A stretch of DNA of 64,000 nt from Octopus sinensis (lineage: Eukaryota): contig NC_043003.1 of the NCBI RefSeq assembly GCF_006345805.1, positions 104,222,001 through 104,286,000 on the forward strand, given 5' to 3'. The notes beneath the pieces are model-generated. The model was not told the origin of the DNA, did no database searches, and worked only from the letters and a program-made list of their open reading frames with translations. Of this stretch, positions 7,627 through 61,372 are shown in pieces. The number at the start of each line of letters is the position of its first letter. The first letter of the stretch is position 1. A program made the translations under genes and the position numbers.

Positions 7627-9014
7627 GGTGCTGAACAAGGTGGCAAGCTAGCAGAATCGTTAGCACGCCAGGCAAAATGCCTAGCGACATTTCATTTGTT
7701 GCTACATTCTGAGTTCAAATTCCACTGAGGTCAACTTTGCCTTTCATCCTTTCAGGGTCGATAAATTAAGTACCAGTTACGCACTGGGGTCGATGTAATC
7801 GACTTAATTCCTTTGTCTGTCCTTGTTTGTCCCCTTTGTGTTTAGCCCCCTGTGGGTATAAAAGAAATAGGTATTTCATTTGTACCAGTCATGTACTGGA
7901 GTCGATACAGTCGACTAGCCTCCTTCCCCAAAAACTTTCAAGGCTGTATGCCTAGAGTAGAAATAATTAAGGTGATGAGCTGACAGAATCCGTAGCATAT
8001 CAGACAGAAGGCTTAGCAGCATTTCTTCCAGCTCTTTACATCCTGAGTTCAAATTCTCGCAAGGTTAACTCTGCCTTTCATTCTTTCTGGGTTAATAAAA
8101 TAAGTGCTAGTTAAGCACTGAGGTCAATGTAATCAACAAAGCCCCACTCCCATCCCCTAAAATTGCTGGTCCTGTGCCAAAATTTGAAACTATTATTATC
8201 ATTTTTATTTTCCTATCTGTGTTGTGTTTTTGCTTCTTTCTGCAACTTAGAGACGCAACACTTTTCTCAACACATGCTGTTCTAAGTATTGCTGCTAACT
8301 GTGTACTTCCTTTGATGCTTATTATTTTGCAGCTTTTTGTGCCAAAATATTGCTTTCTTCTTCTGATGATGATGATGATGATGATTAATATTATTAAGGC
8401 AGCGATCTGACAGAATCGTTAGCACGCCGGGCGAAATGCGTAGCCGTATTTCGTCTGCCGTTACGTTCTGAGTTCAAATTCTGCCGAGGTCGACTTTGCC
8501 TTTCATCCTTTCCGGGTCAATAAATTAAGTACCAGTTACACACTGGGGTCGATGTAATCGACTTAATCCCTTTGTTTGTCCTCTCTGTGTTTAGCCCCTT
8601 GTGAGTAGTAAAGAAATAGGTATTTTGTCTGTCTTCGCATTCTGAGTTCAAATTTTGCCAAGGTTGACTTTGCCTTTCATCCTTTCATGGTCAATAAAAT
8701 AAATACCAGTTGAGTACTGGGGTCGATGTAATTGACTATCTCCCTCTTCCAAATTTCAGGCTTTGTGCCTTTAGTAGAAGAGATTATTATCATTATTATT
8801 AAGATGGTGAACTGGCAGAATCGTTAGCACACTGGACAAAATGCTTAGTGATATTTCATCCGTCTTTATGTTCTGAGTTCAAATTCCACCAAAGTTGACT
8901 TTGCCTTTCATCATTTCTGGGTTGATAAATTAAGTACCAGTTGTGTACTGGGGTTGATCTAATCGACTGGCCCCCTCCCCCAAAATTTCAGACCTTGTAC
9001 CTAAAGTAGAAAAG

Positions 9015-11801: not shown

Positions 11802-14800
11802 ACATACGTATGCATGTGTGTGTTTCTAGATGTATGATAGTTGTAAACAAGCATCCTCATCATGCAATCAGTGTCTTTATTTCCAACCTCCTGTGAAAAT
11901 ATGTGTAGCCATGGAGAAATATCACCTTGCTTGGAAACGGATAAAGACTGGTGATAAGAAAGGTATCCAGCTCCAGGAAATCAACCTCAATAAAATTCAT
12001 TTGACCCATAGAAGCCTGGGAAAATGAAAGTTTAAATGATGATGATGATGATAATGATATTGGAAGACAAGTTGTGTATATGATGTGGTTTATGGATGAT
12101 ATAACCAGGTGTATTTACAATTCTTCCAGTTTAAATAAATGTGACTATGTGTCTGTGTGTTTGTATATATGAAAGGATACAGCTGACAGTTTAATCATCT
12201 GTCAGAGAAATCAGTGAATCTGGTCCATTCTTGGAAGAAAATCCATCAATTTCTTATTGAAAAGAACCCACTAGTTAAGGGTTTGGGTGCAAAAGTGGGA
12301 GTTTTTTTGGGTTTTTTGTAAGGATTTTGATGTGTTTCAATAGAATTTCCGTTATGCATTTTTCTACATTCTTTGAACTATGCCAGAATATAGAAATCAA
12401 AAATATGCTGGAACTTGGACAATTGCATTTTGTCATTAAAAGATTATTATTCCATGCTATTTGATAAAATTATGATTAGCTTTAATGGTTTGGTCACCTG
12501 TTGCCTTAACAGCTATTTGGCAATATAGCACAAGCCAACAGGACACATTGGATAATGTGACCCTAGATACACTATGCTCAAAAAACAGATTAAAAGCTTA
12601 TAACCTGAATTTCATCTTAGGTCTTATCAATCAGGATTGACCTCAGGTTAACAAATGATCTAGAGCCATGCCATTTCTGCCAACTTTTTTAACTAACAAG
12701 ATATCTAAATTCCTTAGTAATGGGGTCAGAAAGTCTAAACATTTGATTTCTAAGGCATTTTCTCAGAATTATTATCAGCAAAAGTGATGTGAAATTGGTG
12801 GGAATTGAAACCAAAATGAAGTTTTGGCTTGTCTCATTGCTTGTTTTTTTTTTGGTGTTTTTTTTGCTCACATTCCATTCTAAATAATGATGGTTTCTCA
12901 AGAATAGCTACTAATTTTGGTGAAGTATAGTTGTTTCAATTAACATAATTATGATGTAATTATTCAACAGAATTTAGAGCAGTGACCTTTCATCCTTTTT
13001 TATCCAAAGCCCAGTGAATAAGGCACTAAAAGTGTTACAATACACTATTTGCTTTTTAAAAAGTTTTATTACATAAAACGAAAACAAATATTCAAATTCT
13101 TTTAAAAGAGAGATAAGTGCTCACACTGACTTTTGCTACTGGTGAACATATGTACATTGTCGAAATGCACAAGCATCAGTGAATGTACATTAAAAGCACT
13201 TAAATTTTTTTTAATGACCAGATATTTTCTGACTCACCTTAAGAATTCATGGCAGTCAACAACATGTAGCCAACTCTTTTTCACATGTGGGCACAGTAGG
13301 CTGGTCAGGAACATTTGGTCTGTAGGAGCACTAAAATAAGATCTTGGCTACCCAATTTTCTTTTCCAGTTGTTACTAAACTCCTTTTCTTTACTTAGGGT
13401 GTGTTCCATAACCAGTGAGATTCCATTAGACTATCACGGAAATCTTCACCTTGATGCTGTGATATCACAGGTAATACAATCTGCTCTCACAGGAGAAGCT
13501 GAACTCAGCAATTGAAGCTAATAAAACATCAAATTCATTATAGTGTCACTACTTTTGTCAGTAAGTTGCACTACTCTGCAGTATCAGTTGACAGTTATGT
13601 AAATTGGATTTCTACTTGAATAATAAAATTGAAGTTTTATATGCTCTTTTACACACACACACACACACACACATTATATTACATCATATTTAATTGTATG
13701 CTACAATTTAAGTTGCTATTGATGTTCTGTTTAATTTTCTATAGGTTGGAATATCTTAGGCTATAGGATTTCTCAGTCAAGGATTATCAAACAACAACTC
13801 AATTATATGAAACATTGAGAATCCCTAAGTTAACCAGGAAGGGACAGTTAAACAAACTGACTTGATTTCTATGTATTTTTATTGAAAACCTACCCAAAAG
13901 AATGAAATGATCTCTTTTGGGGTACAGATTAGAATGTGTCTGTATATAGCAGTAGCGCCATCCTATATATGTTAGCAGTATTTTAATGTGAAATTAAGGT
14001 GGCAAGCTGGCAAAACTATTAGCATACCTGGCAAAATGCTTAGAAACATTTCATCTGTCTTTGTCTTCTGAGTTCAAATGCTGCTGGGGTTGACTTTGCC
14101 TTTCATCCTTTCAAGGTTGATAAAATAAGTACCAGTTGAGTACTGGGGTTAATGTACTCAACTTGACTTCTCCCACAAAATTTCTGGCCTTGTGCCAAAA
14201 TTTGAAACCAATATTCTAATATGAATTCTAATTACTTGCGCTTTGTAGAGGGTCGTATTGTGAAAGCCTTTAATCACATTCTCAAAAGAAACTGCAGAAC
14301 CCCTATGAACAACCTCAATGATGATTTAATTTAATGCAGCAAGGCTCAAAAATTTCCCAACATGACATACTCAGTGTGTATCCTGTGACTCTGTATAAGG
14401 GCCTAATTACTATTAATAGTTACCGAAAACACATTCTGAAGGTCCTTACCTGTCTAAGACTACACAGATGTATTAAATATAATTGTATGCAGCTATATTT
14501 TAATAGATGCTGCTTTGAACTCCTCTAATTTGCTAATTTCAGTTTGACCAAACCTTGAGTACATCAGCATATGCCCTATTTACTGTTTAAATATTAGAGT
14601 GCTATGAACCACAGATTCAATATCCGCTGCTGGTGATATGTAACGATACAGAAACACAAATGTGCTCCAGTCTGATGGCATCATCGTAACCTAATGATGT
14701 ATTTTTCACACATACTGTCAAACTTTGAGCTGTAGGTCTAACATGCTGCACAGTTTAGCAATGCAACTTGAGCCTGGGGTACTTTTCATCAATATTTACT

Positions 14801-33059: not shown

Positions 33060-34528
33060 AGAGGGAAAAGTGAGCCTGGTTGCAGGTGCCAGAGGATGCG
33101 GAGCAGGCTGTGGCTGCAGTATGCCATCTGAGTGACTCAGAGTTGAGGAGATTGCATACCATGCATCACATGGGTGTGGACAGGACATTGTTCCTAGCCA
33201 GGAAAGTTGACTCCGATGTAACAAGACGGAGCATGTAGGGAGTGATTAGCAGCTGTGACAGGTGCCAGTCCATCGACCCTGCTCCAGGTGTACATGAGGC
33301 AGGAAATATTCCAGTGGACCATGACTGGAAATGACTGGCGGTGGACATAACACATTACCGGCAGGGGACATACCTCTCAATGGTTGACTGCAGACCGGGG
33401 CAGTGGGCCATATGGAGGGAGATGAAGATGGGGACCGCAGAGGAAACTGTGAAAGTATTGAATGAGATATTCCTGGAACGAGGCCCCGTGGATGAACTGC
33501 TTATGGATAATGGCACTGCATTTCACTTGGAGGTGCTGAAAGAAATACTTGATGGGTGGAAGGTCAACCGCTTCTTCAGGGTGGCATACTGGCCAAGTGA
33601 AAATGGGATGGTAGAAAAACATCATCATACCATCATGACCATAGCAGAGAGGGGCCGCATTTCACCAATCGAGGCTGTATTTTGGTACAATATGTCGCCC
33701 AGATCAGGACAGGCTGAGGAGTCGGTGCCACACAGGGCAATATTCAGTTATGAGTGGAGGCATCCGTGTACTGCATCAATGCGACCCAGGGCAGAGGAAG
33801 AACACGCCTTTATGCAGATCAGGGAAGAAATTTGGGTAAGACCCCCAAATGCACAGTGTACTTCGTGATGGGAAAAGGGAACAATAACCTCCATCAATTC
33901 GAAGAACAAGTCTCTGTCGATGGTATGCCACGCCACATTTTGGATATACGGAAGATTGTCCATGCCTCAGAGGATGGAACCAGCAGCAGTGAACAAGAAA
34001 ATAAAAACAACAACAGTAGGCAAGAAGATGAAGACATCAGTAGACAAGATGATGAAGCCAGCAGCAACATGCCAGGAACTCAGGCCAGTCCTAGGGTCGC
34101 ACTGCGACCACAGAGGGAACGGCACCCTTCTCCATGGTTGGCTGATTATGAAACCAGTTAAGGTGTGAGTTCAGGAGTGAGAAGTGAGTGGGAAAGCCGG
34201 TTCAGTGATCTGTAGATCAGGGGAGGGGACGTGTGGTGTTGGTGGTGTTATGGGCTGTGATGAGCTATGTGGTGTTGGTGGCGAGGATGACAGATGAGGT
34301 GGGCGGAAGTAAGGCTTGCAGGGGCCGGCGGAAGAGTGAAAGGCGCATGCGTGGGCAAAGCACGTGTGGTCAGTGAGGAAGTGTGGTCAGTTCCAGCACA
34401 GATGGCAGAGCGACAAGATGTGTTGAATTCATGACAGAGTGGCCGCTGATTTTGCCAAGGTAAGGCCTTTTGTATTTCTTTCTCCCGTTGCTTCTTTTTC
34501 TGTTGTCCTTTTCCTCCATCACACTACA
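33060..34528 (+). mobile_element. Gypsy-type LTR retrotransposon 3' remnant: integrase, PPT and 3' LTR (34232-34528)
   Basis: HHCC zinc finger (HHMGV...CDRCQ) and DDE core (VDITH, LMDNGTAF, ENGMVEKHH). Polypurine tract AGGGGAGGGGA precedes an LTR with TGTGGTG...CACTACA termini. Confidence 0.85.
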
Positions 34529-36583: not shown

Positions 36584-36798
36584 ATGGAGACAAACGGCTA
36601 CGAAGCAGAAGACGATCCGACCAGTGCAGCAGCAACGTCGTCGGTCAACACAACCACAACCACAACAACACTTAATAACCATAAGGCCGAGCAAGAAGCT
36701 CTGAGGGAAGCTGCGGCCATCGGTGACATTATTAAACTGCGTCAACTTGTGGAAAACTTTCATGTCGATATCAATTCGCAGAACAGTCTGAACGGATA
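36584..36798 (+). CDS. ANKRD40: ANKRD40-like gene, first coding exon 1A (METNGYEAEDD...EQEALREAAAIGDIIKLRQLVENFHVDINSQNSLNG, ends phase 2)
   Basis: ATG at 36584 in AAAATGG context. The translation resembles the ANKRD40 N-terminus (human ...LREAAALGDIREVQKLVESGVDVNSQNEVNGW, from memory). The exon ends GGA TA|GTAAGC, a strong donor; TA plus T from exon 2 gives Tyr in frame. The surroundings are CpG-rich relative to background. Confidence 0.8.
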
Positions 36799-37990: not shown

Positions 37991-38118
37991 ATATTACTGC
38001 CCCGAACAGTCAAGTGAGACATTCCCAACCTGTTCCTTACAATGGCCGCAGTCACATGACTGAATCGAGTAAAAAATGAAAGCTATGCTATAGTGCGCAT
38101 GTACGTATAATATATGTA

Positions 38119-38139
<21 letters not shown>

Positions 38140-38159
<20 letters not shown>

Positions 38160-38292
38160 TACATATATGTATTATATATATGTATACGTATTATATATAT
38201 ATGTATTTATATATATATATATAGATACATATGTATATTTACATGTTTATGTATATATATATTACATGTATATATATTTACATGTATATGTA

Positions 38293-38340
<48 letters not shown>

Positions 38341-38755
38341 ATATATATACATGTATATATATATATACATGTATATATAATATACATGTATATATATATA
38401 TACATGTATATATATATTACATGTATATGTATGTATATATATATATAATATATATACATGTATATATATTACATGTATATATATATTTACATGTATATAC
38501 ATGTATATATATATATTTACATGTATATATACATGTATATATATATTTACATGTATATATACATGTATATATATATTTACATGTATATATACATGTATAT
38601 ATATATTTACATGTATATATACATGTATATATATATTACATGTATATATACATGTATATATATATTTACATGTATATATACATGTATATATATATTTACA
38701 TGTATATATACATGTATATATATATTTACATGTATATATATATATATATATTTAC

Positions 38756-38786
<31 letters not shown>

Positions 38787-38811
38787 CATGTATATGTATA
38801 TATATATTTAC

Positions 38812-38842
<31 letters not shown>

Positions 38843-39332
38843 CATGTATATATATATATATATTTTACATGTATATGTATATATATATATATTTACATGT
38901 ATATGTATATATATATATTTACATGTATATGTATATATAATATATTACATGTATATGTATATATATATATATATTTACATGTATATATATATATATATTT
39001 ACATGTATATGTATATATATATATATATTACATGTATATATATATATATATTTACATGTAGTATATATATTATATATTTACATGTATATATATATATATA
39101 TTTACATGTAATATATATATATATATTTACATGTATATATATATATTTACATGTATATATATATATATTTACATGTATATATATATATATACATATATAT
39201 TATACATGTATATATATATATTATTACATGTATATATATATATATATTACATGTATATATATATATATATATACATGTATATATATATATATATTTACAT
39301 GTATATGTATATATATATATATATATATTTAC

Positions 39333-39363
<31 letters not shown>

Positions 39364-39408
39364 CATGTATTTATATAATATATTTTTATATTATATATAT
39401 ATATTTAC

Positions 39409-39439
<31 letters not shown>

Positions 39440-40083
39440 CATGTATATGTATATATATATATATATTTACATGTATATGTATATATATATATATATTTAC
39501 ATGTATATGTATATATATATATATATTTACATGTATATGTATATATATATATATTTACATGTATATGTATATATATATATATATTTACATGTATATGTAT
39601 ATATATATATATATTTACATGTGTATATATATATATATATTTACATGTATATGTATATATATTTACATGTATATATATATTTACATGTATATGTATATAT
39701 ATATTTACTTGTATATGTATATATATATACTTGTATATGTTATATATATTATTACTTGTATATGTATATATAATTTACATGTATATTTACATGTATATGT
39801 ATATAATGTACTTATATGTATATATATATTTTACTTGTATATGTATATATATATTTACATGTATATATATATATATTTACATGTATATGTATATATATAT
39901 TTACTTGTATATGTATATATATATTTACTTGTATATGTATATATTTATATGTATATATGTATATATTTACATGTATATATGTATATATTTATATGTATAT
40001 ATATATATATTTACTTGTATATGTATATATATATTTACATGTATATGTATATATAAATATATGTATACGGATATATTTATATA

Positions 40084-40090
<7 letters not shown>
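38140..40090. repeat. ~2-kb compound micro/minisatellite, unit ~(TA)nTTTACATG, drifting to TTTACTTG at the right end
   Basis: Direct reading; it is the source of the spurious 551-aa and 317-aa ORFs. Confidence 0.95.
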
Positions 40091-40097
<7 letters not shown>

Positions 40098-40114
<17 letters not shown>

Positions 40115-41859: not shown

Positions 41860-44235
41860 CAATGATCTCGGATCACAACATAATAGAGCAGTCTATGTAT
41901 GGATCAAAAGCCCCCACAGACACACAGCCTATACAAAGCATCCACAATCTCCAACTTTCATAAAGCAAATTGGAAGTTGATCGAGAAAGAGATCCTCAAA
42001 CAGGATTGGTCTAAACGTCTCTCCACACCAGACACTGACATGAAACACAAACGCTTCATGTCCATAATACAAGCCATATGTGACAAATATGTCCCAGTGT
42101 GCAGGGCCAGCACACACAAAAACAAAAACAAGATCCCTAGAGTAAGGAAGATTCTTATGAGACGACGGACAAGGATTGCGAACCGCCTGAGCAAGCACAC
42201 CAAAAGTGGTGAGAAGTCTCGGCTCGAGAGAATGCTAATGGAAATTGAGAAAAGTCTGCATCAGTCTCATGAAAAGGATATAAGCAGATAAAGAAGCTTG
42301 GGTAATAGAAAATATCAAGTCAAACCCTAAAGCTTTCTTTAAGTTTGCCAAAGAGACAGCCACAGTGTGCCAGAGAATAGGACCTCTCTTCTAAAAAGAT
42401 GGCTCCCTCACAGGAAATCCCACGAGGATAAGTGAAATACTGAACGAACAGTTCCAAAGTGTGTTCACTACACCTCTAGGACACAGGCAAGTAAACAACC
42501 CAGAAGAATTCTTTGCCACTTTACCTGTGGCCAAAGAGGCAAAAATTGAGTACATCAACATTGAAGATGATGATATCACACTGGCCATAGATGAGATTGA
42601 CACAAACTCAGCTGCTGGACCTGACGGATTTCCAGCGATCCTTCTCAAATCGTGCAAATGAGCCCTTGCAAAACCGCTGTGGCTTCTTTTTCAGAGCTCT
42701 CTTGCAAGTGGTAAGCTCCTAGTCAAATTGAAAGAGGGGGTAATATGCCCTATCCATAAGGGAGGAAGCAGAGCAGATGCTAAAAATTATAGGCCTATCT
42801 CTCTGACTTCACACATCAGCAAAGTCATGGAATGAATAGTCCGCAAGAAACTAATCATGTTCCTTGAAGAAAATGACTTGCTGACTGACACCCAGCATGG
42901 ATTTCGACCAGGTAGAAACTGCCTAACACAGCTCCTGCAACACTATGACTGGGTGTTAAAACAGCTACTAATGGCTCAAATGTAGATGTGATATATCTCG
43001 ACTTTGCAAAAGCCTTTGATAAAGTCGACCATGGTATGATCTGTCACAAACTGCGTGATCTCGACATAGGTGGAAAACTTGGAGAGTGACTGCACAACTT
43101 CCTAAAAGATAGAAGGCAGGCAGTTGTGGCCAATGGAGCCACCTCCAAGGAAACACAAATAACAAGCAGTGTTCCACAGGGCACTGTCTTGGGGCCACTG
43201 CTGTTCATAGTGGCCCTTTCAGACATGCCCCCAGTTGCTAAGATGGCCACCCTTGCTAGCTATGCAGATGACACAAAAGTCTCCCACACAATACAAAACC
43301 CTGGAAATATTGCACATCTGCAACAAGAGTTGGATACAATATACAGGTGGGCTGAGGACAACAACATGCAGTTTAATGCAGGTAAGTTCCAGGCCCTGCG
43401 CTACTGGCACACAAAGGTAAACGACATGCAGACTGGATACACTGGCTTGGGAAGAATTGTAATTCCTGAGTCAAAATCAGTGCGTGACCTGGGCATTGAC
43501 ATGAGCAATGATGCCTCTTTCCAAGTGCATATTACTAATTTGGTGATAAAATGCAAACGGCTAGCTGGATGGATTCTCTGAACTTACAGAACAAGAGAGA
43601 AGGAGATACTGATGGTCTTTTGGAAAACTTTCGTCCTCAGCCGCTTGGACTACTGCTCCCAACTATGGTCACAACACAATATAAAGCTAACAGCAGAACT
43701 CGAAGCAATTCAAAGAAGCTACACAAAGAAGATCGTCTCAATGCAACATATCAGATACTGGGAAAGACTGAAAGTATTAAAACTCTTCTCCCCAGAGCGA
43801 AGGCAGGAGAGATATGCAGTGATGTACATCTGGAAAATCCTGGAGGGTCTTGTCCCAAACTTTGGCATTCAAAGTTAACCCAACCACAGAACGGGGTGCC
43901 ACTGCATGGTGCCAAAGATTCCAACATCACCATCAAAATACAGGACCAGATACTGCAACAGCTCTGGTTTCAGAGGACCACAGCTCTTCAACATCCTCCC
44001 TAAATGCCTGAGAGACTTGCATGGTGGGGTTTCTTTAAAACTAAACTGGATCTCTTCTTGTCGGGGGTCCCAGATGAACCTACCTCTTGGCAGGAGACAC
44101 AGATGCGGGCAGCGGCATCGAACTCCCTTGTCAACCAAGTGCCAAGTATCAGAGGTGGATTCACATACTAGTGTAGCTCATTCAGCGGTGGTGCCCCAGC
44201 ATGGCTACAGCCTTCGGGCTGAATCATTTTAAAGG
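41860..44235 (+). mobile_element. CR1-clade LINE ORF2 (reverse transcriptase), degenerate, with 3' tail
   Basis: Motifs AAGPDGF, NYRPISLTSHISKVME, QHGFRPGR, YLDFAKAFDKVDHG, PQGTVLGPLLF, YADD (43261) and VRDLG, interrupted by several stops. Confidence 0.92.
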
Positions 44236-51733: not shown

Positions 51734-51891
51734 ATGGAAAACGACAACCAGACACAACAGAATGCAGACGTTGCCCCTCATGTGTTGGAAGGGAGTTTTC
51801 GCGAAGCAGCTGCCTGTGGGGACATGGAAAAACTGACCGAAATCGTGGAGAGTGGTGTGGATGTTAATTCACAGAGCAGTCTTCATGGGTG
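51734..51891 (+). CDS. ANKRD40: ANKRD40-like gene, alternative first coding exon 1B (MENDNQTQQNADVAPHVLEGSFREAAACGDMEKLTEIVESGVDVNSQSSLHG, ends phase 2)
   Basis: ATG at 51734 (AACATGG) with an in-frame upstream stop at 51692-51694. It is 52 codons plus TG, then donor GTAAAT at 51892. Clear paralog of exon 1A (REAAA.GD..KL...V....VD.NSQ.SL.G). Not in the ORF track; found by manual translation. Confidence 0.8.
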
Positions 51892-55638: not shown

Positions 55639-55787
55639 TACTGCTTTGCACTGGGCTACCATTAGAAACCATACATCTGTTGTTGCTTTCCTTTTGACAC
55701 ATGGTGCAGATAAAAATATAAAAAATTTCGATGGTAACATCCCTGCTGAATTAACATCAGACTCCACCATACATCAGTTACTGGGAG
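55639..55787 (+). CDS. ANKRD40: ANKRD40-like exon 2, ankyrin repeat (TALHWATIRNHTSVVAFLLTHGADKNIKNFDGNIPAELTSDSTIHQLLG), phase 2 in, phase 1 out
   Basis: Acceptor TTTTAATTTCAG| at 55638 and donor G|GTAAGT at 55788. Canonical ankyrin consensus TALHWA...LL..GAD.N. The 149 nt are 1 nt, 49 codons and 1 nt, in frame with both 1A and 1B. Confidence 0.88.
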
Positions 55788-56312
55788 GTAAGTAACTGTT
55801 TGTTATTCTAGTAAAACTCATATCATCATTCATCATCATCATCTTTTAACATCCATGTTTGACGCTGGCATGGATTAGATAGTTTGACAGGATTCAATGG
55901 GCCCTGCTCCCCTGTCTAGTTTGACATGTTTTCTATGGTTGGATGCCCTTCCCAATGTCAACCACTTTACAATGTGTACTGGTTGATGACAAACTCCAAG
56001 AGAGATGTATTCTCTCTTGAGTTAAGCCTGAGCAGCCAACTACTGTAATTAAATTAACTGTGCACCTTTTCCACATTATCATTATCATTTAATGTCCATG
56101 CTCCAAGGTGGCACAAGCTGGATGGTTGGATGGCAGGATTTGATGGGTCCAAGAATTGCAAAGTGCTCCACTGTCTACTTTAGCACAGTTTCTATGGCTG
56201 GATGCCCTTCCCAACGCCAGTCACTCTACAGCATGTACTAGGTGCCTTTTTCATGCCACTGGCACCAGTGAAGTTGCCATGCAGCTTGCAAGACAATGAA
56301 ACTGAGAAAGGT

Positions 56313-58270
56313 GCCTTCAAGGCACTTTACACTCAGAACTCTCTCCAACATCTTGTGGACGCAATGGATTCGGATGAGAATTTCAAGTTAAAGGAGTACT
56401 AGCATTACTTCACAATCACAATGTGCCTGTCAGTCATCCACGCTGCTCTTAAAGACATGAAAACAGAAACCTTCATCACATGCTGGAAGAATGTGTGGCC
56501 AGAGTGTGTCCAGGACTACAAGGGCTTCTCACCTGAAGTTATTCAGCATGAGGCTGTCACCAATGCGGTGAAACTGGCAAAGGTACTTGGTGGTGAAGGT
56601 TTTGATGGCATCACACAAGATGAGGTCAACAACCTCATCAATGCCCACTCTGAAACCCTGACAAACAAAGATTTGTTGGAGTCAGCAAAGAGGAGAAAGC
56701 ACCAGATCCAGAGGAAGAGGATGAGGTGGGCCTGGCAATCGAACATCCTTTTAAGGACAGTAAAGGAATTGCAAGTGAAGGTGGAAGCATGGGATCCCTA
56801 TATAGTTTGGTCTCTCCAATATAAAAATGCTATCACTGCTGCTATGCAGACATATAAAATTCTCCTCACCACCATGAAGAAACAACAACAGCAACTTCCC
56901 ATCACGATGCTCCTCAAGCCCACCAAGAAAGCCTTGCACGAAGATACGACATCCCCTGAAACAGCTGAAGAAGAGGCGTCACCTGAAGAGCTTTAAATCT
57001 TCTTTGCTGTGCAGTCATTGCCATAATTATTTTCATCATCATCATCTTAAATCAATACCATTCATTATTGGTGAGTGACTGTACATTTTATTTTATTTTT
57101 TACTAAATTACTATTAAATATATATATATATATAAAATACAAAATGGGACAAGAACGCAAAACATCCAGACAGTTAGGTAATACAAAAAAAGGGACAACA
57201 AAACATCCAGATAGACGATATAAAGAAAACAAGGATGGGTCATTCGGAGTTTTCTTTCCTCGGTCAAGTTCCAGATTATCTTTGCAATTGCGGCTGGTTA
57301 TACTCGAGATTGCTCCAATCTGGCCAGCCCCAAAGAAAAACTAAACTCAGAGCATTAGATTCCTTGGAAGAAAGTAGCGAATGTATACGAAAACAAGGAT
57401 GGAAAAAAACAGAGTATGTTACGCAAATACAAATAACAGGACATAACAACAGGTGTCTTTCAACTAAGGATGAATTGAATCAAGCTGGTGTGTGTAGAAA
57501 TAAAGCCTTACAGTAGGGATACAGGATTTCACAGGCACAAGGAGGAATATAGATGTTGCATGGACGGCGACCGAACCAAGAAAGAAAGATCAGGCTTGGC
57601 CGAACACCAGTCACGTGGTGAGAGAGAGGTAGAGGCAGAGGGGCAAGAAAAAATGACAGGGTCACAGTGAAGTGAAAAGAGGAGGGAAAGTGAGCAAGAA
57701 GAGAAGGCAAGGAAATGTGAGAGAGGGGGAACGAAAGAAAGAAGGGTACACTTTGGTCTCTTATATGTAAGTATATATTTATCTAAATCTTGTACAACTC
57801 TATTTTTCTTTTGTTCCCCTCTCTCACATTTCCTTGTCTTCTCTTCTTGCTTACTTTCCCTCATCTTTTCACTTCACTGTGTCCCTGTCATTTTTTCTCG
57901 CCCCATCCTTAATTCTTTTGTCCTTCTACCTCTCTCTCTTCTCTCCCCACGTGACCGATGTTCAGCCAAACCTGATCTTTCTTTCTTGGTTTGGCCATCA
58001 TCCATGCAAAGGCTATATTCCTCCCTGTGCCTGTGAAATCTTGTATCCCTGCCGTGAGGCTTTATTTCCTCTCACGCCAGCTTGATTTAATTTGTCCTTA
58101 GTCGAAAGACACCTGTTGTTATGTCCTGTTATTTGTATTTGCGTAACATTCTCCGTCTTTTTTTTTCCATCCTTGTTTTCTTTGTATTGTCTATCTGGAT
58201 GTTTTGTTGTCTCTTTTTGGTATCACCTAACTGTCTGGATGTTTTGTGTTCTTGTCCCATTTTGTATTTT

Positions 58271-58301
<31 letters not shown>

Positions 58302-58458
58302 TATATACATACATATATATGTGTGTGTATATATATATATTATGTCATATTTTGACATTTATAGGCATTTTTATGGATCATGTCCAATATTCACGATTTT
58401 TCACTATTCGTGGGTGTTCTAGGAACCTAATCCCTGCGAATACCTTGGGACTACTGTA
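56313..58458 (+). mobile_element. second, 5'-truncated copy of the same Tigger family, in intron 2 of the ANKRD40-like gene
   Basis: ORF 56421-56996 is nearly identical to the C-terminal part of ORF 20567-21448. It ends GGGACTACTG|TA at ~58458 and is interrupted by a palindromic insertion at ~57133-58272. Confidence 0.88.
57133..58272. repeat. ~1.1-kb imperfect palindrome (foldback repeat) nested in the (TA)n of the Tigger 3' end
   Basis: AAAATACAAAATGGGACAAGAAC...CAAGGATGG (57135-57240) inverts to 58166-58272. 57390-57745 inverts to 57805-58170, with a ~60-nt spacer. Confidence 0.8.
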
Positions 58459-58593
58459 TAACAAAATAGACCAGCCCAAAACTTAACGGCAATTTAATTA
58501 AATAGCCAATTAACAGTAGGAATGTTCCAAATATGTTTTATTACCCCTATTTCCTTTTCGAACCTTTATTGTTTTCTTCTCCTTTCATTCTAG

Positions 58594-58761
58594 TCTCAGA
58601 TGCAGCTGCTTTGGATATAAAGGAACCCAACTTACCAATTCATCCCAATTATTTAGCTCATCCTGTATTTCCGCACACAACTCCTACGCAGTCCACACCT
58701 TCAAGTGCCCCTCAACAGCTGCCTCCATCCAAAGGAATATATTCATATAACACTGAGAATG
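58594..58761 (+). CDS. ANKRD40: ANKRD40-like exon 3a (VSDAAALDIKEPNLPIHPNYLAHPVFPHTTPTQSTPSSAPQQLPPSKGIYSYNTEN), phase 1-1
   Basis: Pyrimidine tract plus TAG acceptor at 58591-58593; donor AATG|GTTAGT; 168 nt, symmetric. LPIHPNYLAHPVFP resembles the conserved ANKRD40 motif (LPFVPNYLANPAFP in human, from memory). Confidence 0.8.
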
Positions 58762-60548
58762 GTTAGTAGAAACATTATTCTTTTTGTCTTGATATCTTCA
58801 CCTTTTTTTTTTTTGTTATCTCCCTCAATCTTCTCTGCTGTCCCCTATGCGATCGTTTTTCATCTTCATATCCTCATTTCTCTGTATCCTTTTTTCTGTT
58901 CACTCTTTTCCATTGCTCACCTTTGTCTCTTTTATACTATTCCCACCTTTTCTTTTTTTTTTTTTTTGGCTGTCCCTCTATATTGGTTTCAAATTTTTGC
59001 ACAATGCCAGCAACTTCAGGGGAGTGGGTAAGCCAATTACATCAACCCTATTACTCAACTGGCACTTATTTTACCAACTCTGAAAGGATGAAAGGTAAAG
59101 TCGACCTCAGCAGAGTTGGAACCCAGAATGTAAAGACAATGAAATACCTCTAATTATTTTTTACCTGCCGTTCTAACAATTCTTCCAGCTTGCTGCTTGC
59201 TATCCCTGTATATTGTTGAAACATCTGAAGAGATCAACCCAATGATTTTCAGTGTCCTCCTTATGCTAACAAATGAGGATACAAACATTAAATCCATCAA
59301 ATCAGTGAGACCCATCATACACTATCATGTTTTTATGTTGGACACTGAATATCAGGATCGTATTTTCCGCTTCTAAATGACAAATACCTCTTTCTGGAAT
59401 AATTACCTCCCTTATACCGATATTCTATTTGGGAAACGAAATTTGTCTCATTGCTTTGAACCCCACAGGATCTGGCAATAAAAACCAGCTCAGTGAATTA
59501 TGAGGTTTCTTGAAAGTATTAAATAGACATTTTGTAGTTAGTAGTTGTTTAACCCCTATCCTCTTCGAATCAGCCCCAATCCAGCAGGTCTATATTCGAG
59601 CGTTTCAGTTGTGACCATCCTATCTTTTATTCAGACATTGTGTATCAAGGACTACATTATCCACTGTGTCCTTCCTTATTTAAGATGGTATTAGTATGTA
59701 TTTTTTTAGGGTGATTTGGCTGCTATTTCTAGCAGACTGAGCTAACACATAATACTCCTTTATTCGATTTGGGTTTCAAAGCTTTTGAAGATTAAAGTAA
59801 GAATCAGTTCATTATCGACTATGCTCAACCATCCCTCACCAGTCCTAAGAATTGATGCTGGATCAATTGTTGTTGTCATTTGCATAATACCATTGTTGGT
59901 GCAATGGGTCCTCCTCCTCATCATCATTTAATGTCTGTTTTCCATGCTGGTATGAGTTGTGTAGTTTAACAGGATCCAACAAGTTGAAGGACTACATTGA
60001 GCCCCAGTGTCTGTTTTGGTATAGTTTCTATGGCTGAATGCCTTTCCTAATGCCAACTGCTTCACAGAGTGTACTGCATGTTTTTTAGCATGATACTGGC
60101 ACTTTGCAAGAGAAGGACAAAGTTCCCTTGACTGGGTGGAGTTGTAGTACAAGTCTTTATGCCAGGATTGAGATGCTGAAATATAGTAGAGGAACAGACA
60201 CAGGTATCATGCTATAAAGGGGATAAAAAGCTACCCCACATTATATAAGGGTGAGTGAGGATAGCTGGAAGGAAGACAAAGATGGTGGTAGTGAGACTTG
60301 GAAGTTACAAAAAGGTGAATATATAAGAGAAGATCAGAAGTGGAGATGTTCATAGATGGGCAGGTAAGTTCATTAGAGTGTAATAGGAGAGTGACAGACA
60401 GTTCAGAGAGTGAGATAGAGATGAATGATAAACCAGGGTGGAGGTTTTTATTGGTGATAAGTAAGAGATTGGAGGAGAAAGTGAAAGAACTAGGAATGGC
60501 TCAGGAAGGAGGTGATATGTAGCAGTACAGGAATGGTAAAGAGTAGTA

Positions 60549-60587
<39 letters not shown>

Positions 60588-61198
60588 AATTATTGTATAC
60601 AGTGCTCAGGTGCACCACAACTTGTCAGAAAGTGCATATAAAGTACATGCAGTAATGTAAAAATGTCTGGAAAGCGAACAATGTATGAGTCAGATACATG
60701 TTTGTGTGTGTATGGAGGGGAGAAAATCAAGTGTAGTGTTGGCGAATCTCAGAAAGCATGGAAGTTTTGAAGGATGCAGTGCTCCGACAACTAACAACTG
60801 ATGCCGGCAGTTTGTTCCATGCTTCAGCAACTCTGAGCGTGAAAAAATGTTTCCTGAAGTCATGAAGTAATATAATAAACCTGTAGATAGATCAGGAAAT
60901 AGGGAGATGATGTGCATGGTTGAAGAGTGATGGGAAAGCAAGAAAGAGATGTATTGTGACAGAGATGGAGAGGTGGCTTTTGTGAATGAATGAGAAAGGT
61001 GGTTGTGGGTCGTTGACAGCAGGTTTGGGATGATGTTAAGAATAGTGTCAGATATGAGGTATTAAAGATAAGATAAGTCCTAAGATGTAGCTCAAAGGAA
61101 TGAGTTACAGCTCATGGTTCTAAACAAATGTGGTTGCTATTTTCCTTTCCTTTCTTTTCTTAATTTCTTTCTCTTTTTTTTTCTGTTTTTTGTTACAG

Positions 61199-61372
61199 TC
61201 ACAGATGCCACTGCTGCTTTGGATATAAAAGAACAGAACGCACCGATCCATTCAAATTACCAGGCACATCGAGCAATGCCACACGCAAACCCTACACAAC
61301 CTGCTCACAGTGGTGTTCCACAGCAGCAGATGGTACCATCCAAAGGTTTATTTGCCTTTAACCTTGAAAATG
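61199..61372 (+). CDS. ANKRD40: ANKRD40-like exon 3b, tandem paralog of 3a (VTDATAALDIKEQNAPIHSNYQAHRAMPHANPTQPAHSGVPQQQMVPSKGLFAFNLEN), phase 1-1
   Basis: Long pyrimidine tract plus TACAG acceptor; same donor context as 3a (AATG|GTTAGTAG); 174 nt, open and symmetric. About 34 of 58 residues are identical to 3a by manual alignment. Confidence 0.72.

What the first reader, a model, noticed from the sequence alone, without database searches (positions are those of the whole stretch)
58594..61372. Tandemly duplicated symmetric exon pair 3a/3b, candidate mutually exclusive exons
The exons are 168 and 174 nt, both phase 1-1, with about 34/58 identical residues and identical donor context (AATG|GTTAGTAG). 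Exon 3a keeps the ANKRD40-like motif (PIHPNYLAHPVFP), while 3b has altered it (PIHSNYQAHRAMP) yet stays open with conserved ends, which suggests selection rather than decay. Combined with 1A/1B this allows at least a 2x2 isoform matrix, plus both-included and both-skipped forms, from a gene I would otherwise expect to be simple.
Basis: partly seen in the sequence, partly recalled or inferred. Interest (0 to 1): 0.75.

Follow-up and report, generated by a model that had tools for sequence, protein, structure and literature searches.

The report
Duplicated exon pair in octopus ANKRD40
Octopuses carry two adjacent copies of one small exon in the ANKRD40 gene, and every exon-3-containing public gene model splices both copies in, one after the other, so this is an ordinary internal protein repeat and not an either/or splicing switch.

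Summary
Window 58594-58761 (168 nt) and 61199-61372 (174 nt) are homologous, open, phase 1-1 exons with AG/GT sites. They share 33 of 55 aligned residues (z = 17 against shuffles). The window is the Octopus sinensis ANKRD40 locus.

Both exons are conserved, open and under purifying selection in O. bimaculoides and Argonauta hians (dN/dS about 0.2-0.3). A cuttlefish genome and about 60 other animal orthologues have a single copy. The duplication is therefore octopod-specific and old, and 3b is not decaying.

The mutually exclusive reading is not supported. All eight exon-3-containing models (O. sinensis X1/X2, O. bimaculoides X1/X2, three O. vulgaris transcripts from an Iso-Seq-informed annotation, one Argonauta model) join 3a to 3b in frame. 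One older model skips both, and none carries only one.

Three known enforcing mechanisms are excluded by the sequence:
- Steric hindrance: the intron is 2437 nt.
- U2/U12 incompatibility: both introns are GT-AG.
- Frameshift/NMD: both lengths are divisible by three.

No conserved docking/selector pairing was found. No reads were available, so minor single-exon isoforms cannot be excluded. This is a new example of a well-known kind, and interest is low.

The parts
58594..58761 (+). Exon 3a of ANKRD40 (168 nt, phase 1-1). It encodes residues 122-177 of XP_029638664.1 and carries the canonical linker motif LPIHPNYLAHPVFPH.
   Evidence: 100% tblastn match to P0001 residues 122-177. Orthologous exons are in O. 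bimaculoides L001 35555-35722 and Argonauta L002 11726-11866.
61199..61372 (+). Exon 3b (174 nt, phase 1-1), the derived paralogue of 3a. It encodes residues 178-235 with the altered motif APIHSNYQAHRAMPH.
   Evidence: Orthologues are at L001 37901-38074 and L002 13395-13553. dN/dS is 0.29-0.32 against Argonauta.
58762..61198 (+). Intron between 3a and 3b (2437 nt, GT-AG, donor GTTAGT, roughly 60-nt polypyrimidine tract before 3b). It contains a SINE-like repeat copy (about 59909-60103) and an (ATA)n microsatellite.
   Evidence: About 89% identical to O. bimaculoides. No block is conserved with Argonauta apart from the dispersed repeat.
55639..55787 (+). Exon 2 (second half of the ankyrin domain). 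It ends in phase 1 and is the upstream partner of 3a.
   Evidence: 98.7% identical to O. bimaculoides.
36584..36798 (+). Coding part of first exon 1A (isoform X1), the copy that resembles the single cuttlefish exon 1.
51734..51891 (+). Coding part of alternative first exon 1B (isoform X2), a diverged duplicate of 1A.
   Evidence: It is conserved with its ATG and GTAAAT donor in Argonauta (L002, about 7645-7797).

Best explanation
A segment of about 2.6 kb containing the single, symmetric (phase 1-1) linker exon of ANKRD40 was duplicated in tandem in the octopod lineage. This happened after the split from decapodiform cephalopods and before the Octopus/Argonauta split. Because the exon is symmetric and its length is a multiple of three, the spliceosome can use both copies in series (2 -> 3a -> 3b -> 4). 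The main product is then an ANKRD40 protein whose linker between the ankyrin domain and the C-terminal ubiquitin-like domain is about 57 residues longer. That linker carries the family's conserved short motif (LPIxPNYLxxPxFPY) once in canonical form (3a) and once in a diverged form (3b). Both copies are kept by purifying selection. Shown here: the homology, the lineage distribution, the selection, the compatibility of splice sites and frame, and the presence of both exons in all current models that include exon 3. Inferred: that serial inclusion is the dominant splicing pattern in vivo (from annotation, not from reads), and that 3b acts as a disordered linker extension or variant motif and not as an alternative to 3a.
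For: Homology is far beyond chance (z = 17.3). The window holds exactly two copies. The window translation 1A-2-3a-3b is identical to O. sinensis XP_029638664.1. Eight models contain 3a and 3b in tandem and none has one alone: O. sinensis X1/X2, O. bimaculoides X1/X2, O. vulgaris CAI9726276-78 and Argonauta hians GAB1598421.1. The O. vulgaris annotation used Iso-Seq, RNA-seq and PASA isoform updates (PMC10700109). Both exons keep AG/GT sites, phase 1-1 and an open frame in O. bimaculoides and Argonauta. Octopus-Argonauta dN/dS is 0.22-0.30 for 3a and 0.29-0.32 for 3b, and paralogue dS is about 1.7, which is saturated and rules out recent conversion. Exons are 95-96% identical between O. sinensis and O. 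bimaculoides, against 91% for introns. The cuttlefish Acanthosepion pharaonis genomic locus has one exon 3 and one exon 1. Cuttlefish RNA-derived contigs carry one copy. About 60 non-octopod orthologues have one motif copy, and an HMM built from both copies hits twice only in octopods. AlphaFold2 models the ankyrin and UBL domains confidently, gives the start of 3a pLDDT 84 falling to 63, and gives 3b below 50.
Against: No RNA reads or junction counts could be examined, so gene models are only a proxy. One older O. bimaculoides model (UniProt A0A0L8HHF2, 203 aa) skips both exons, so the pair is not strictly constitutive. Between the two Octopus species 3b shows dN/dS 0.84, but this rests on only 8 substitutions. 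Low pLDDT for 3b partly reflects an alignment with only two sequences in those columns. Only one decapodiform genome was inspected, and no vampire squid, cirrate octopod or Nautilus.
Confidence: 0.78

Rival explanations
1. Strict mutually exclusive splicing: each mRNA carries 3a or 3b but never both, which would give a canonical-motif isoform and a variant-motif isoform.
For: The pair meets the usual sequence-only criteria for such candidates: adjacent, homologous, similar length, same phase (criteria in PMC5740500). Both copies are under selection.
Against: All eight exon-3-containing models join 3a to 3b, and none has one alone. The intron is 2437 nt, so there is no steric block. Both flanking introns are GT-AG U2-type with a strong polypyrimidine tract before 3b. 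The lengths 168 and 174 are divisible by three and the joint product has no stop, so NMD cannot remove double inclusion. No intronic block is conserved between Octopus and Argonauta apart from a dispersed SINE-like repeat. Three-way complementarity searches return only microsatellites, purine/pyrimidine tracts and SINE copies, and the hits differ between lineages.
Confidence: 0.03
2. Independent or coordinated cassette exons: both-in is the major form, but 3a, 3b or both are skipped in some tissues. All combinations stay in frame, so isoforms with two, one or no motif copies would result.
For: Both exons are symmetric, so every combination is in frame. A both-skipped model exists in O. bimaculoides (P0003), and a vertebrate representative of 203 aa also lacks the linker (P0076). 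Both exons, and the ancestral cuttlefish exon, carry the same non-consensus donor GTTAGT with T at +3. By general knowledge of splice-site strength, such a donor is typical of regulated exons.
Against: No annotated single-exon isoform exists in any of four species. Flanking-intron conservation between the two Octopus species is unexceptional: 100-nt flanks are 0.93-0.96 identical, against an intron mean of 0.905 and a 90th percentile of 0.96. The support behind the 203-aa model is unknown.
Confidence: 0.17
3. 3b is a decaying or falsely annotated pseudo-exon that gene predictors include only because it resembles 3a.
For: 3b has lost several near-invariant motif residues (P139->S, P145->R, F147->M equivalents). 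It evolves faster than 3a, with 28/52 against 36/46 residues identical to Argonauta.
Against: The frame is open and the AG/GT sites are retained in O. sinensis, O. bimaculoides, O. vulgaris and Argonauta, although synonymous divergence is about 0.9. dN/dS is about 0.3. 3b-specific residues (HSNYQA, MPHANP, SG..QQM) are shared between Octopus and Argonauta.
Confidence: 0.02

Closest known systems
Tandem exon duplication giving an internal protein repeat (serially spliced duplicated exons; reviewed in PMC9013439 and, from my own knowledge, Letunic et al. 2002)
   Same: Adjacent homologous exons of the same phase and nearly the same length. The duplicated exon is symmetric and both copies are retained in the mRNA. 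The copy number is lineage-specific.
   Different: Nothing in kind. The specific case (octopod ANKRD40 linker exon, with a duplicated short linear motif) has not been described in the papers searched.
Mutually exclusive exon clusters derived from tandem duplication (e.g. human ATE1 7a/7b, PMC7797038; Drosophila Dscam1, 14-3-3zeta; the human atlas in PMC5740500)
   Same: Origin by tandem exon duplication, conserved phase and length, and both copies under purifying selection.
   Different: Here the two exons are joined in all exon-3-containing models. Joint inclusion keeps the frame, the intron is long, the splice sites are compatible, and no conserved competing RNA structure was found.
ANKRD40 of other animals (vertebrate ANKRD40; mollusc, annelid and brachiopod 'ankyrin repeat domain-containing protein 40')
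   Same: N-terminal ankyrin repeats, a linker with the LPIxPNYLxxPxFPY motif, and a C-terminal ANKRD40_UBL domain (PF27687). The cuttlefish has the same four-coding-exon layout.
   Different: Octopods have two linker exons and two alternative first exons. All other orthologues examined have one motif copy, and the cuttlefish locus also shows one linker exon and one first exon.

Membership tests
Tandem exon duplication | Two adjacent exons of one gene are homologous beyond chance | tested here: met
   33/55 identical residues, score z = 17.3 against 5000 shuffles, 117/174 nt identical. tblastn E = 1e-13 to 3e-14 for the cross-matches.
Tandem exon duplication | Same intron phase and compatible length, so that serial use keeps the frame | tested here: met
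   Both exons are phase 1-1, 168 and 174 nt. The 1A/1B-2-3a-3b concatenation has no stop.
Tandem exon duplication | Outgroups carry a single copy (derived state) | tested here: met
   The cuttlefish genomic locus L003 has one exon 3. About 60 orthologues from molluscs to vertebrates have one motif copy.
Mutually exclusive exon cluster | No transcript joins the two exons, unless joining shifts the frame (criterion R1 of PMC5740500) | tested here: not met
   Eight annotated models in four species join 3a to 3b in frame. This is annotation-level evidence, and reads were not available.
Mutually exclusive exon cluster | Junctions that bridge the other exon exist (2->3b and 3a->4) | not testable with these tools
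   No RNA-seq or junction data were accessible. No annotated isoform has either junction. The protein collection holds no octopus transcript-derived fragments for this gene.
Mutually exclusive exon cluster | Enforcing mechanism: steric hindrance (donor to branch point under about 50 nt) | tested here: not met
   The intron between 3a and 3b is 2437 nt in O. sinensis, 2178 nt in O. bimaculoides and 1528 nt in Argonauta.
Mutually exclusive exon cluster | Enforcing mechanism: U2/U12 splice-site incompatibility | tested here: not met
   All four sites are GT-AG, with GTTAGT donors and polypyrimidine-CAG/TAG acceptors. There is no ATATCC/GTATCC U12 donor.
Mutually exclusive exon cluster | Enforcing mechanism: frameshift/NMD on double inclusion or double skipping | tested here: not met
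   168 and 174 are divisible by 3. The both-in (P0001) and both-out (P0003) products are full-length ORFs.
Mutually exclusive exon cluster | Enforcing mechanism: conserved docking and selector RNA pairings | tested here: inconclusive
   No syntenic intronic block is conserved between Octopus and Argonauta. Exact 10-12-mer and 15/16 (G-U allowed) three-way searches give only (CA)n/(ATG)n repeats, a purine tract pairing with both polypyrimidine tracts, and SINE copies. None is shared between lineages. Sensitivity is limited, and the two Octopus species are too close (91% intron identity) to show covariation.
ANKRD40 protein family | N-terminal ankyrin repeats | tested here: met
   Pfam Ank_2, Ank, Ank_5, Ank_3 and Ank_4 match residues 32-110 of P0001, all above their cut-offs.
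ANKRD40 protein family | C-terminal ANKRD40_UBL domain (PF27687) | tested here: met
   Precomputed PF27687 hits are listed for P0001, P0002, P0007 and the orthologues. The region is modelled as a confident beta-grasp-like fold with pLDDT above 90. This exon lies just beyond the window end, at about +760 nt by synteny with L001. The local Pfam copy did not return this family.
ANKRD40 protein family | Linker motif LPIxPNY[LIM]xxPxFP[YH] | tested here: met
   3a carries LPIHPNYLAHPVFPH. P139, Y141, P145, F147 and P148 are at least 90% conserved in 48 orthologues.

The most novel reading that the evidence does not exclude
Octopods use the two lineage-specific duplications in this small gene (1A/1B and 3a/3b) combinatorially. 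On this reading there is regulated, perhaps tissue-specific, skipping of 3a or 3b alone. ANKRD40 would then be made with the canonical motif, the variant motif, both or neither, and the variant copy would have acquired a different binding partner. Strict mutual exclusivity is a small subset of this reading.
Probability: 0.15. Interest if true: 0.4.

Novelty: new member of a known kind. Interest (0 to 1): 0.17.

Why it matters
It matters little beyond the gene itself. It is a clean, datable example of how a symmetric exon that encodes a short linear motif can be duplicated and kept for a long time as an internal repeat. It also illustrates that sequence criteria alone (homology, same phase, similar length) over-predict mutually exclusive splicing. 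ANKRD40 is almost uncharacterised. A natural variant with one canonical and one diverged copy of its most conserved linker motif could help define what that motif binds. Two independent exon duplications (first exon and linker exon) in one four-exon gene in octopods is a small curiosity about this lineage's gene-structure evolution.

Tried and rejected
1. The first word-indexed protein search used only the window-encoded part and found no decapodiform orthologue. A full-length query was needed.
2. RNAduplex on whole introns returned a meaningless intron-length duplex, weaker than shuffles, and then timed out, so it was discarded.
3. The three-way complementarity scan with G-U pairs exceeded block-shuffled controls. 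Inspection showed purine tract against polypyrimidine tracts, GT-rich microsatellites and SINE copies. These hits are not evidence of docking/selector sites, and the shuffle null was too weak for such tracts.
4. Perfectly conserved runs of 40 nt or more between O. sinensis and O. bimaculoides are found everywhere at 91% intron identity. They cannot single out regulatory elements.
5. A local Pfam scan gives no family for the 3a/3b peptide.
6. No paper links ANKRD40 to a short linear motif, and the 79 papers that mention ANKRD40 are unrelated to this question.
7. Recent gene conversion between 3a and 3b was considered, because the Octopus paralogues are 60% identical against 54% for the 3b orthologues. 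It was rejected because paralogue dS (about 1.7) is about twice orthologue dS (about 0.9), and 3b-specific residues are shared with Argonauta.
8. A whole-gene duplication followed by fusion was considered. It was rejected because the exon order is 1A, 1B, 2, 3a, 3b, 4.

Full report
**What is there**

The window carries the 5' four-fifths of the ANKRD40 gene of Octopus sinensis on the + strand. Concatenating the open stretches with their GT/AG sites gives five coding exons:
- 1A at 36584-36798
- 1B at 51734-51891
- 2 at 55639-55787
- 3a at 58594-58761
- 3b at 61199-61372

The translation 1A-2-3a-3b is identical to residues 1-235 of RefSeq XP_029638664.1 (O. sinensis ANKRD40 isoform X1, 336 aa). 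By synteny with O. bimaculoides, the last exon (the ubiquitin-like domain) lies about 760 nt beyond the window end.

**Check of the observation**

Exons 3a (168 nt) and 3b (174 nt) are bounded by AG and GT. Each is open only in the frame that continues exon 2, and both are phase 1-1.

Their peptides share 33 identical residues in 55 aligned pairs. The alignment score is 161, against -13 +/- 10 for 5000 shuffles (z = 17). At the DNA level 117 of 174 columns are identical. Both donors read AATG|GTTAGTAG. tblastn finds exactly two copies in the window.

**Is 3b a real, selected exon?**

I fetched the orthologous loci of O. bimaculoides (L001) and the argonaut Argonauta hians (L002). In both, 3a and 3b are present, open, phase 1-1 and flanked by AG/GT.

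The Argonauta exons are shorter (141 and 159 nt) but still multiples of three. Its 3b uses an AG 6 nt downstream of the Octopus site, and in Octopus that AG is also present inside the exon (TCACAG|ATG).

| Comparison | 3a | 3b |
|---|---|---|
| Octopus vs Argonauta dN/dS (dS about 0.6-1.0) | 0.22-0.30 | 0.29-0.32 |
| O. sinensis vs O. bimaculoides identity (introns 91%) | 96.4% | 95.4% |

Synonymous divergence between the paralogues is saturated (about 1.7), and 3b-specific residues (HSNYQA, MPHANP, QQM) are shared by Octopus and Argonauta. The duplication therefore predates that split, and there has been no recent conversion.

**When did it arise?**

An exhaustive HMMER search and a second word-indexed search returned ANKRD40 orthologues from molluscs, annelids, a brachiopod, an echinoderm, insects and vertebrates.
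- All non-octopod sequences examined have one copy of the linker motif LPIxPNY[LIM]xxPxFP[YH].
- An HMM built from the six octopod exon peptides hits twice only in octopod proteins.
- The closest outgroup is the cuttlefish Acanthosepion pharaonis (CAE1332342.1). Its genomic locus (L003) has four coding exons with a single exon 3 and a single exon 1, and no second copy at E < 1.
- Intron-less contigs assembled from cuttlefish sequencing runs carry the same single-copy ORF.

The duplication is thus octopod-specific. It arose after the octopod/decapodiform split and before the Octopus/Argonauta split.

The cuttlefish exon has the same boundaries (tag|TTTCAGATGC ... GATAATG|gttagta). The 'identical donor context' of 3a and 3b is therefore inherited from the ancestral exon. 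3a resembles the single ancestral exon, and 3b is the derived copy. In Octopus 3b, three of the five near-invariant motif positions are changed (P139->S, P145->R, F147->M equivalents).

**How are the two exons spliced?**

I could not reach read-level data, and the protein collection holds no octopus transcript-derived fragments of this gene. The best available proxy is annotation.

| Species | Models | Exon 3 state |
|---|---|---|
| O. sinensis | X1, X2 | 3a + 3b joined |
| O. bimaculoides | X1, X2 | 3a + 3b joined |
| O. vulgaris | three transcripts | 3a + 3b joined |
| Argonauta hians | one model | 3a + 3b joined |
| O. bimaculoides | older UniProt A0A0L8HHF2 (203 aa) | both skipped |

No model has exactly one of the two exons. 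The O. vulgaris annotation combined PacBio Iso-Seq, RNA-seq, StringTie/TACO models and two rounds of PASA isoform updates (PMC10700109).

Under the validation rules of the human mutually exclusive exon atlas, a transcript that joins the two exons without shifting the frame rejects the cluster. [quoted passage not shown]

**Could mutual exclusivity be enforced at all?**

Of the four known mechanisms (PMC5740500), three are excluded by the sequence:
- Steric hindrance: the 3a-3b intron is 2437 nt (2178 nt in O. bimaculoides and 1528 nt in Argonauta).
- U2/U12 incompatibility: all sites are U2-type GT-AG, and 3b has a polypyrimidine tract of about 60 nt.
- Frameshift/NMD: both lengths are divisible by three, and the joint product has no stop.

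The fourth mechanism is competing RNA structures. Sensitive blastn between Octopus and Argonauta finds syntenic conservation only at the exons and their immediate flanks, plus copies of a dispersed SINE-like repeat.

Searches for a docking site complementary to two selectors return only the following:
- microsatellites,
- a purine tract (57671) that can pair with both polypyrimidine tracts,
- SINE copies in Argonauta.

None of these is shared between lineages. Flanking-intron conservation between the two Octopus species lies within the intron background. This test is negative but of limited power.

**Most likely mechanism**

A tandem duplication of a symmetric linker exon was followed by serial splicing of both copies. 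The resulting protein keeps its ankyrin and ubiquitin-like domains, and its linker is about 57 residues longer. That linker holds one canonical and one diverged copy of the family's conserved motif.

AlphaFold2 models both domains with pLDDT above 90. The start of 3a scores 84, falling to about 63. 3b scores below 50, partly because only two sequences cover it in the alignment. This fits a disordered linker extension.

Skipping of the whole pair probably occurs at some level. Supporting points are the 203-aa model, a 203-aa vertebrate representative that likewise lacks the linker, and the conserved non-consensus GTTAGT donor. Skipping of one exon alone is possible in frame but unsupported.

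**Comparison and novelty**

This is a textbook outcome of tandem exon duplication (PMC9013439). It meets every test for that class, and it fails the transcript-level and mechanistic tests for a mutually exclusive cluster. The exons are already part of public RefSeq models. I found no paper that describes the duplication. I rate it a new member of a known kind, of low interest.

**Remaining uncertainty**

The splicing pattern rests on gene models and not on reads. Only one decapodiform genome was inspected, and no vampire squid, cirrate octopod or Nautilus. The function of the ANKRD40 motif is unknown.

Noticed in passing
window 36584-36798 and 51734-51891; L002 about 7645-7797; L003 3001-3138: The alternative first exons 1A and 1B are themselves diverged duplicates (REAAAIGDIIKLRQLVENFHVDINSQNSLNG against REAAACGDMEKLTEIVESGVDVNSQSSLHG). 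Each has its own ATG and a phase-2 GT donor. 1B is conserved with its ATG and donor in Argonauta, but the cuttlefish locus has a single exon 1 that resembles 1A. This four-exon gene therefore underwent two separate exon duplications in octopods.
   Followed up: partly
window 58590-58599 and 61195-61204; L002 about 13384-13395: Both 3a and 3b have a second in-frame AG 6 nt inside the exon (ctAG|TCTCAG|ATG and acAG|TCACAG|ATG). Argonauta 3b lacks the upstream AG and uses the downstream one. Octopus may therefore have tandem alternative acceptors that add or remove two codons.
   Followed up: no
window 57115-58283 (intron 2, about 310 nt upstream of exon 3a): A large foldback structure of nested inverted repeats: arms 57121-57747 and 57797-58283, 87-94% complementary. 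The left arm aligns to O. bimaculoides. Window 57719-58327 had no plus-strand match there, so the right arm may be an O. sinensis-lineage inverted duplication or a foldback element.
   Followed up: partly
window 55822-55985, 56074-56254, 59909-60103; many sites in L001 and L002: A SINE-like dispersed repeat (core ...TTTCTATGGCTGGATGCCCTTCCCAATGCCA...) occurs twice in intron 2 and once in the 3a-3b intron, all in direct orientation. Argonauta has copies in both orientations in the corresponding introns.
   Followed up: partly
window 60558-60865; L001 26485-33838: Lineage-specific indels in the introns. About 300 nt that include an (ATA)n microsatellite are present in O. sinensis only. About 7.3 kb of intron 2 is present in O. 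bimaculoides only.
   Followed up: no
window 41887-44229 and 33335-34165 (intron between 1A and 1B): Retroelement remnants. One ORF fragment matches reverse transcriptase RVT_1 (E = 9e-11, 43090-43578). Another gives a weak, sub-threshold integrase-core match (33335-33865).
   Followed up: partly
window 56403-56993 (intron 2): An open stretch of 197 aa (…KDMKTETFITCWKNVWPECVQDYKGF…) has no significant Pfam match. It is conserved at about 83% DNA identity with O. bimaculoides, like the surrounding intron. It is probably a transposon-derived remnant.
   Followed up: partly
window about 38000-40100: A very AT-rich block of about 2 kb (GC 13%) made of TA/CA-type simple repeats lies in the 1A-1B intron. 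Similar microsatellite blocks are scattered through the window.
   Followed up: no
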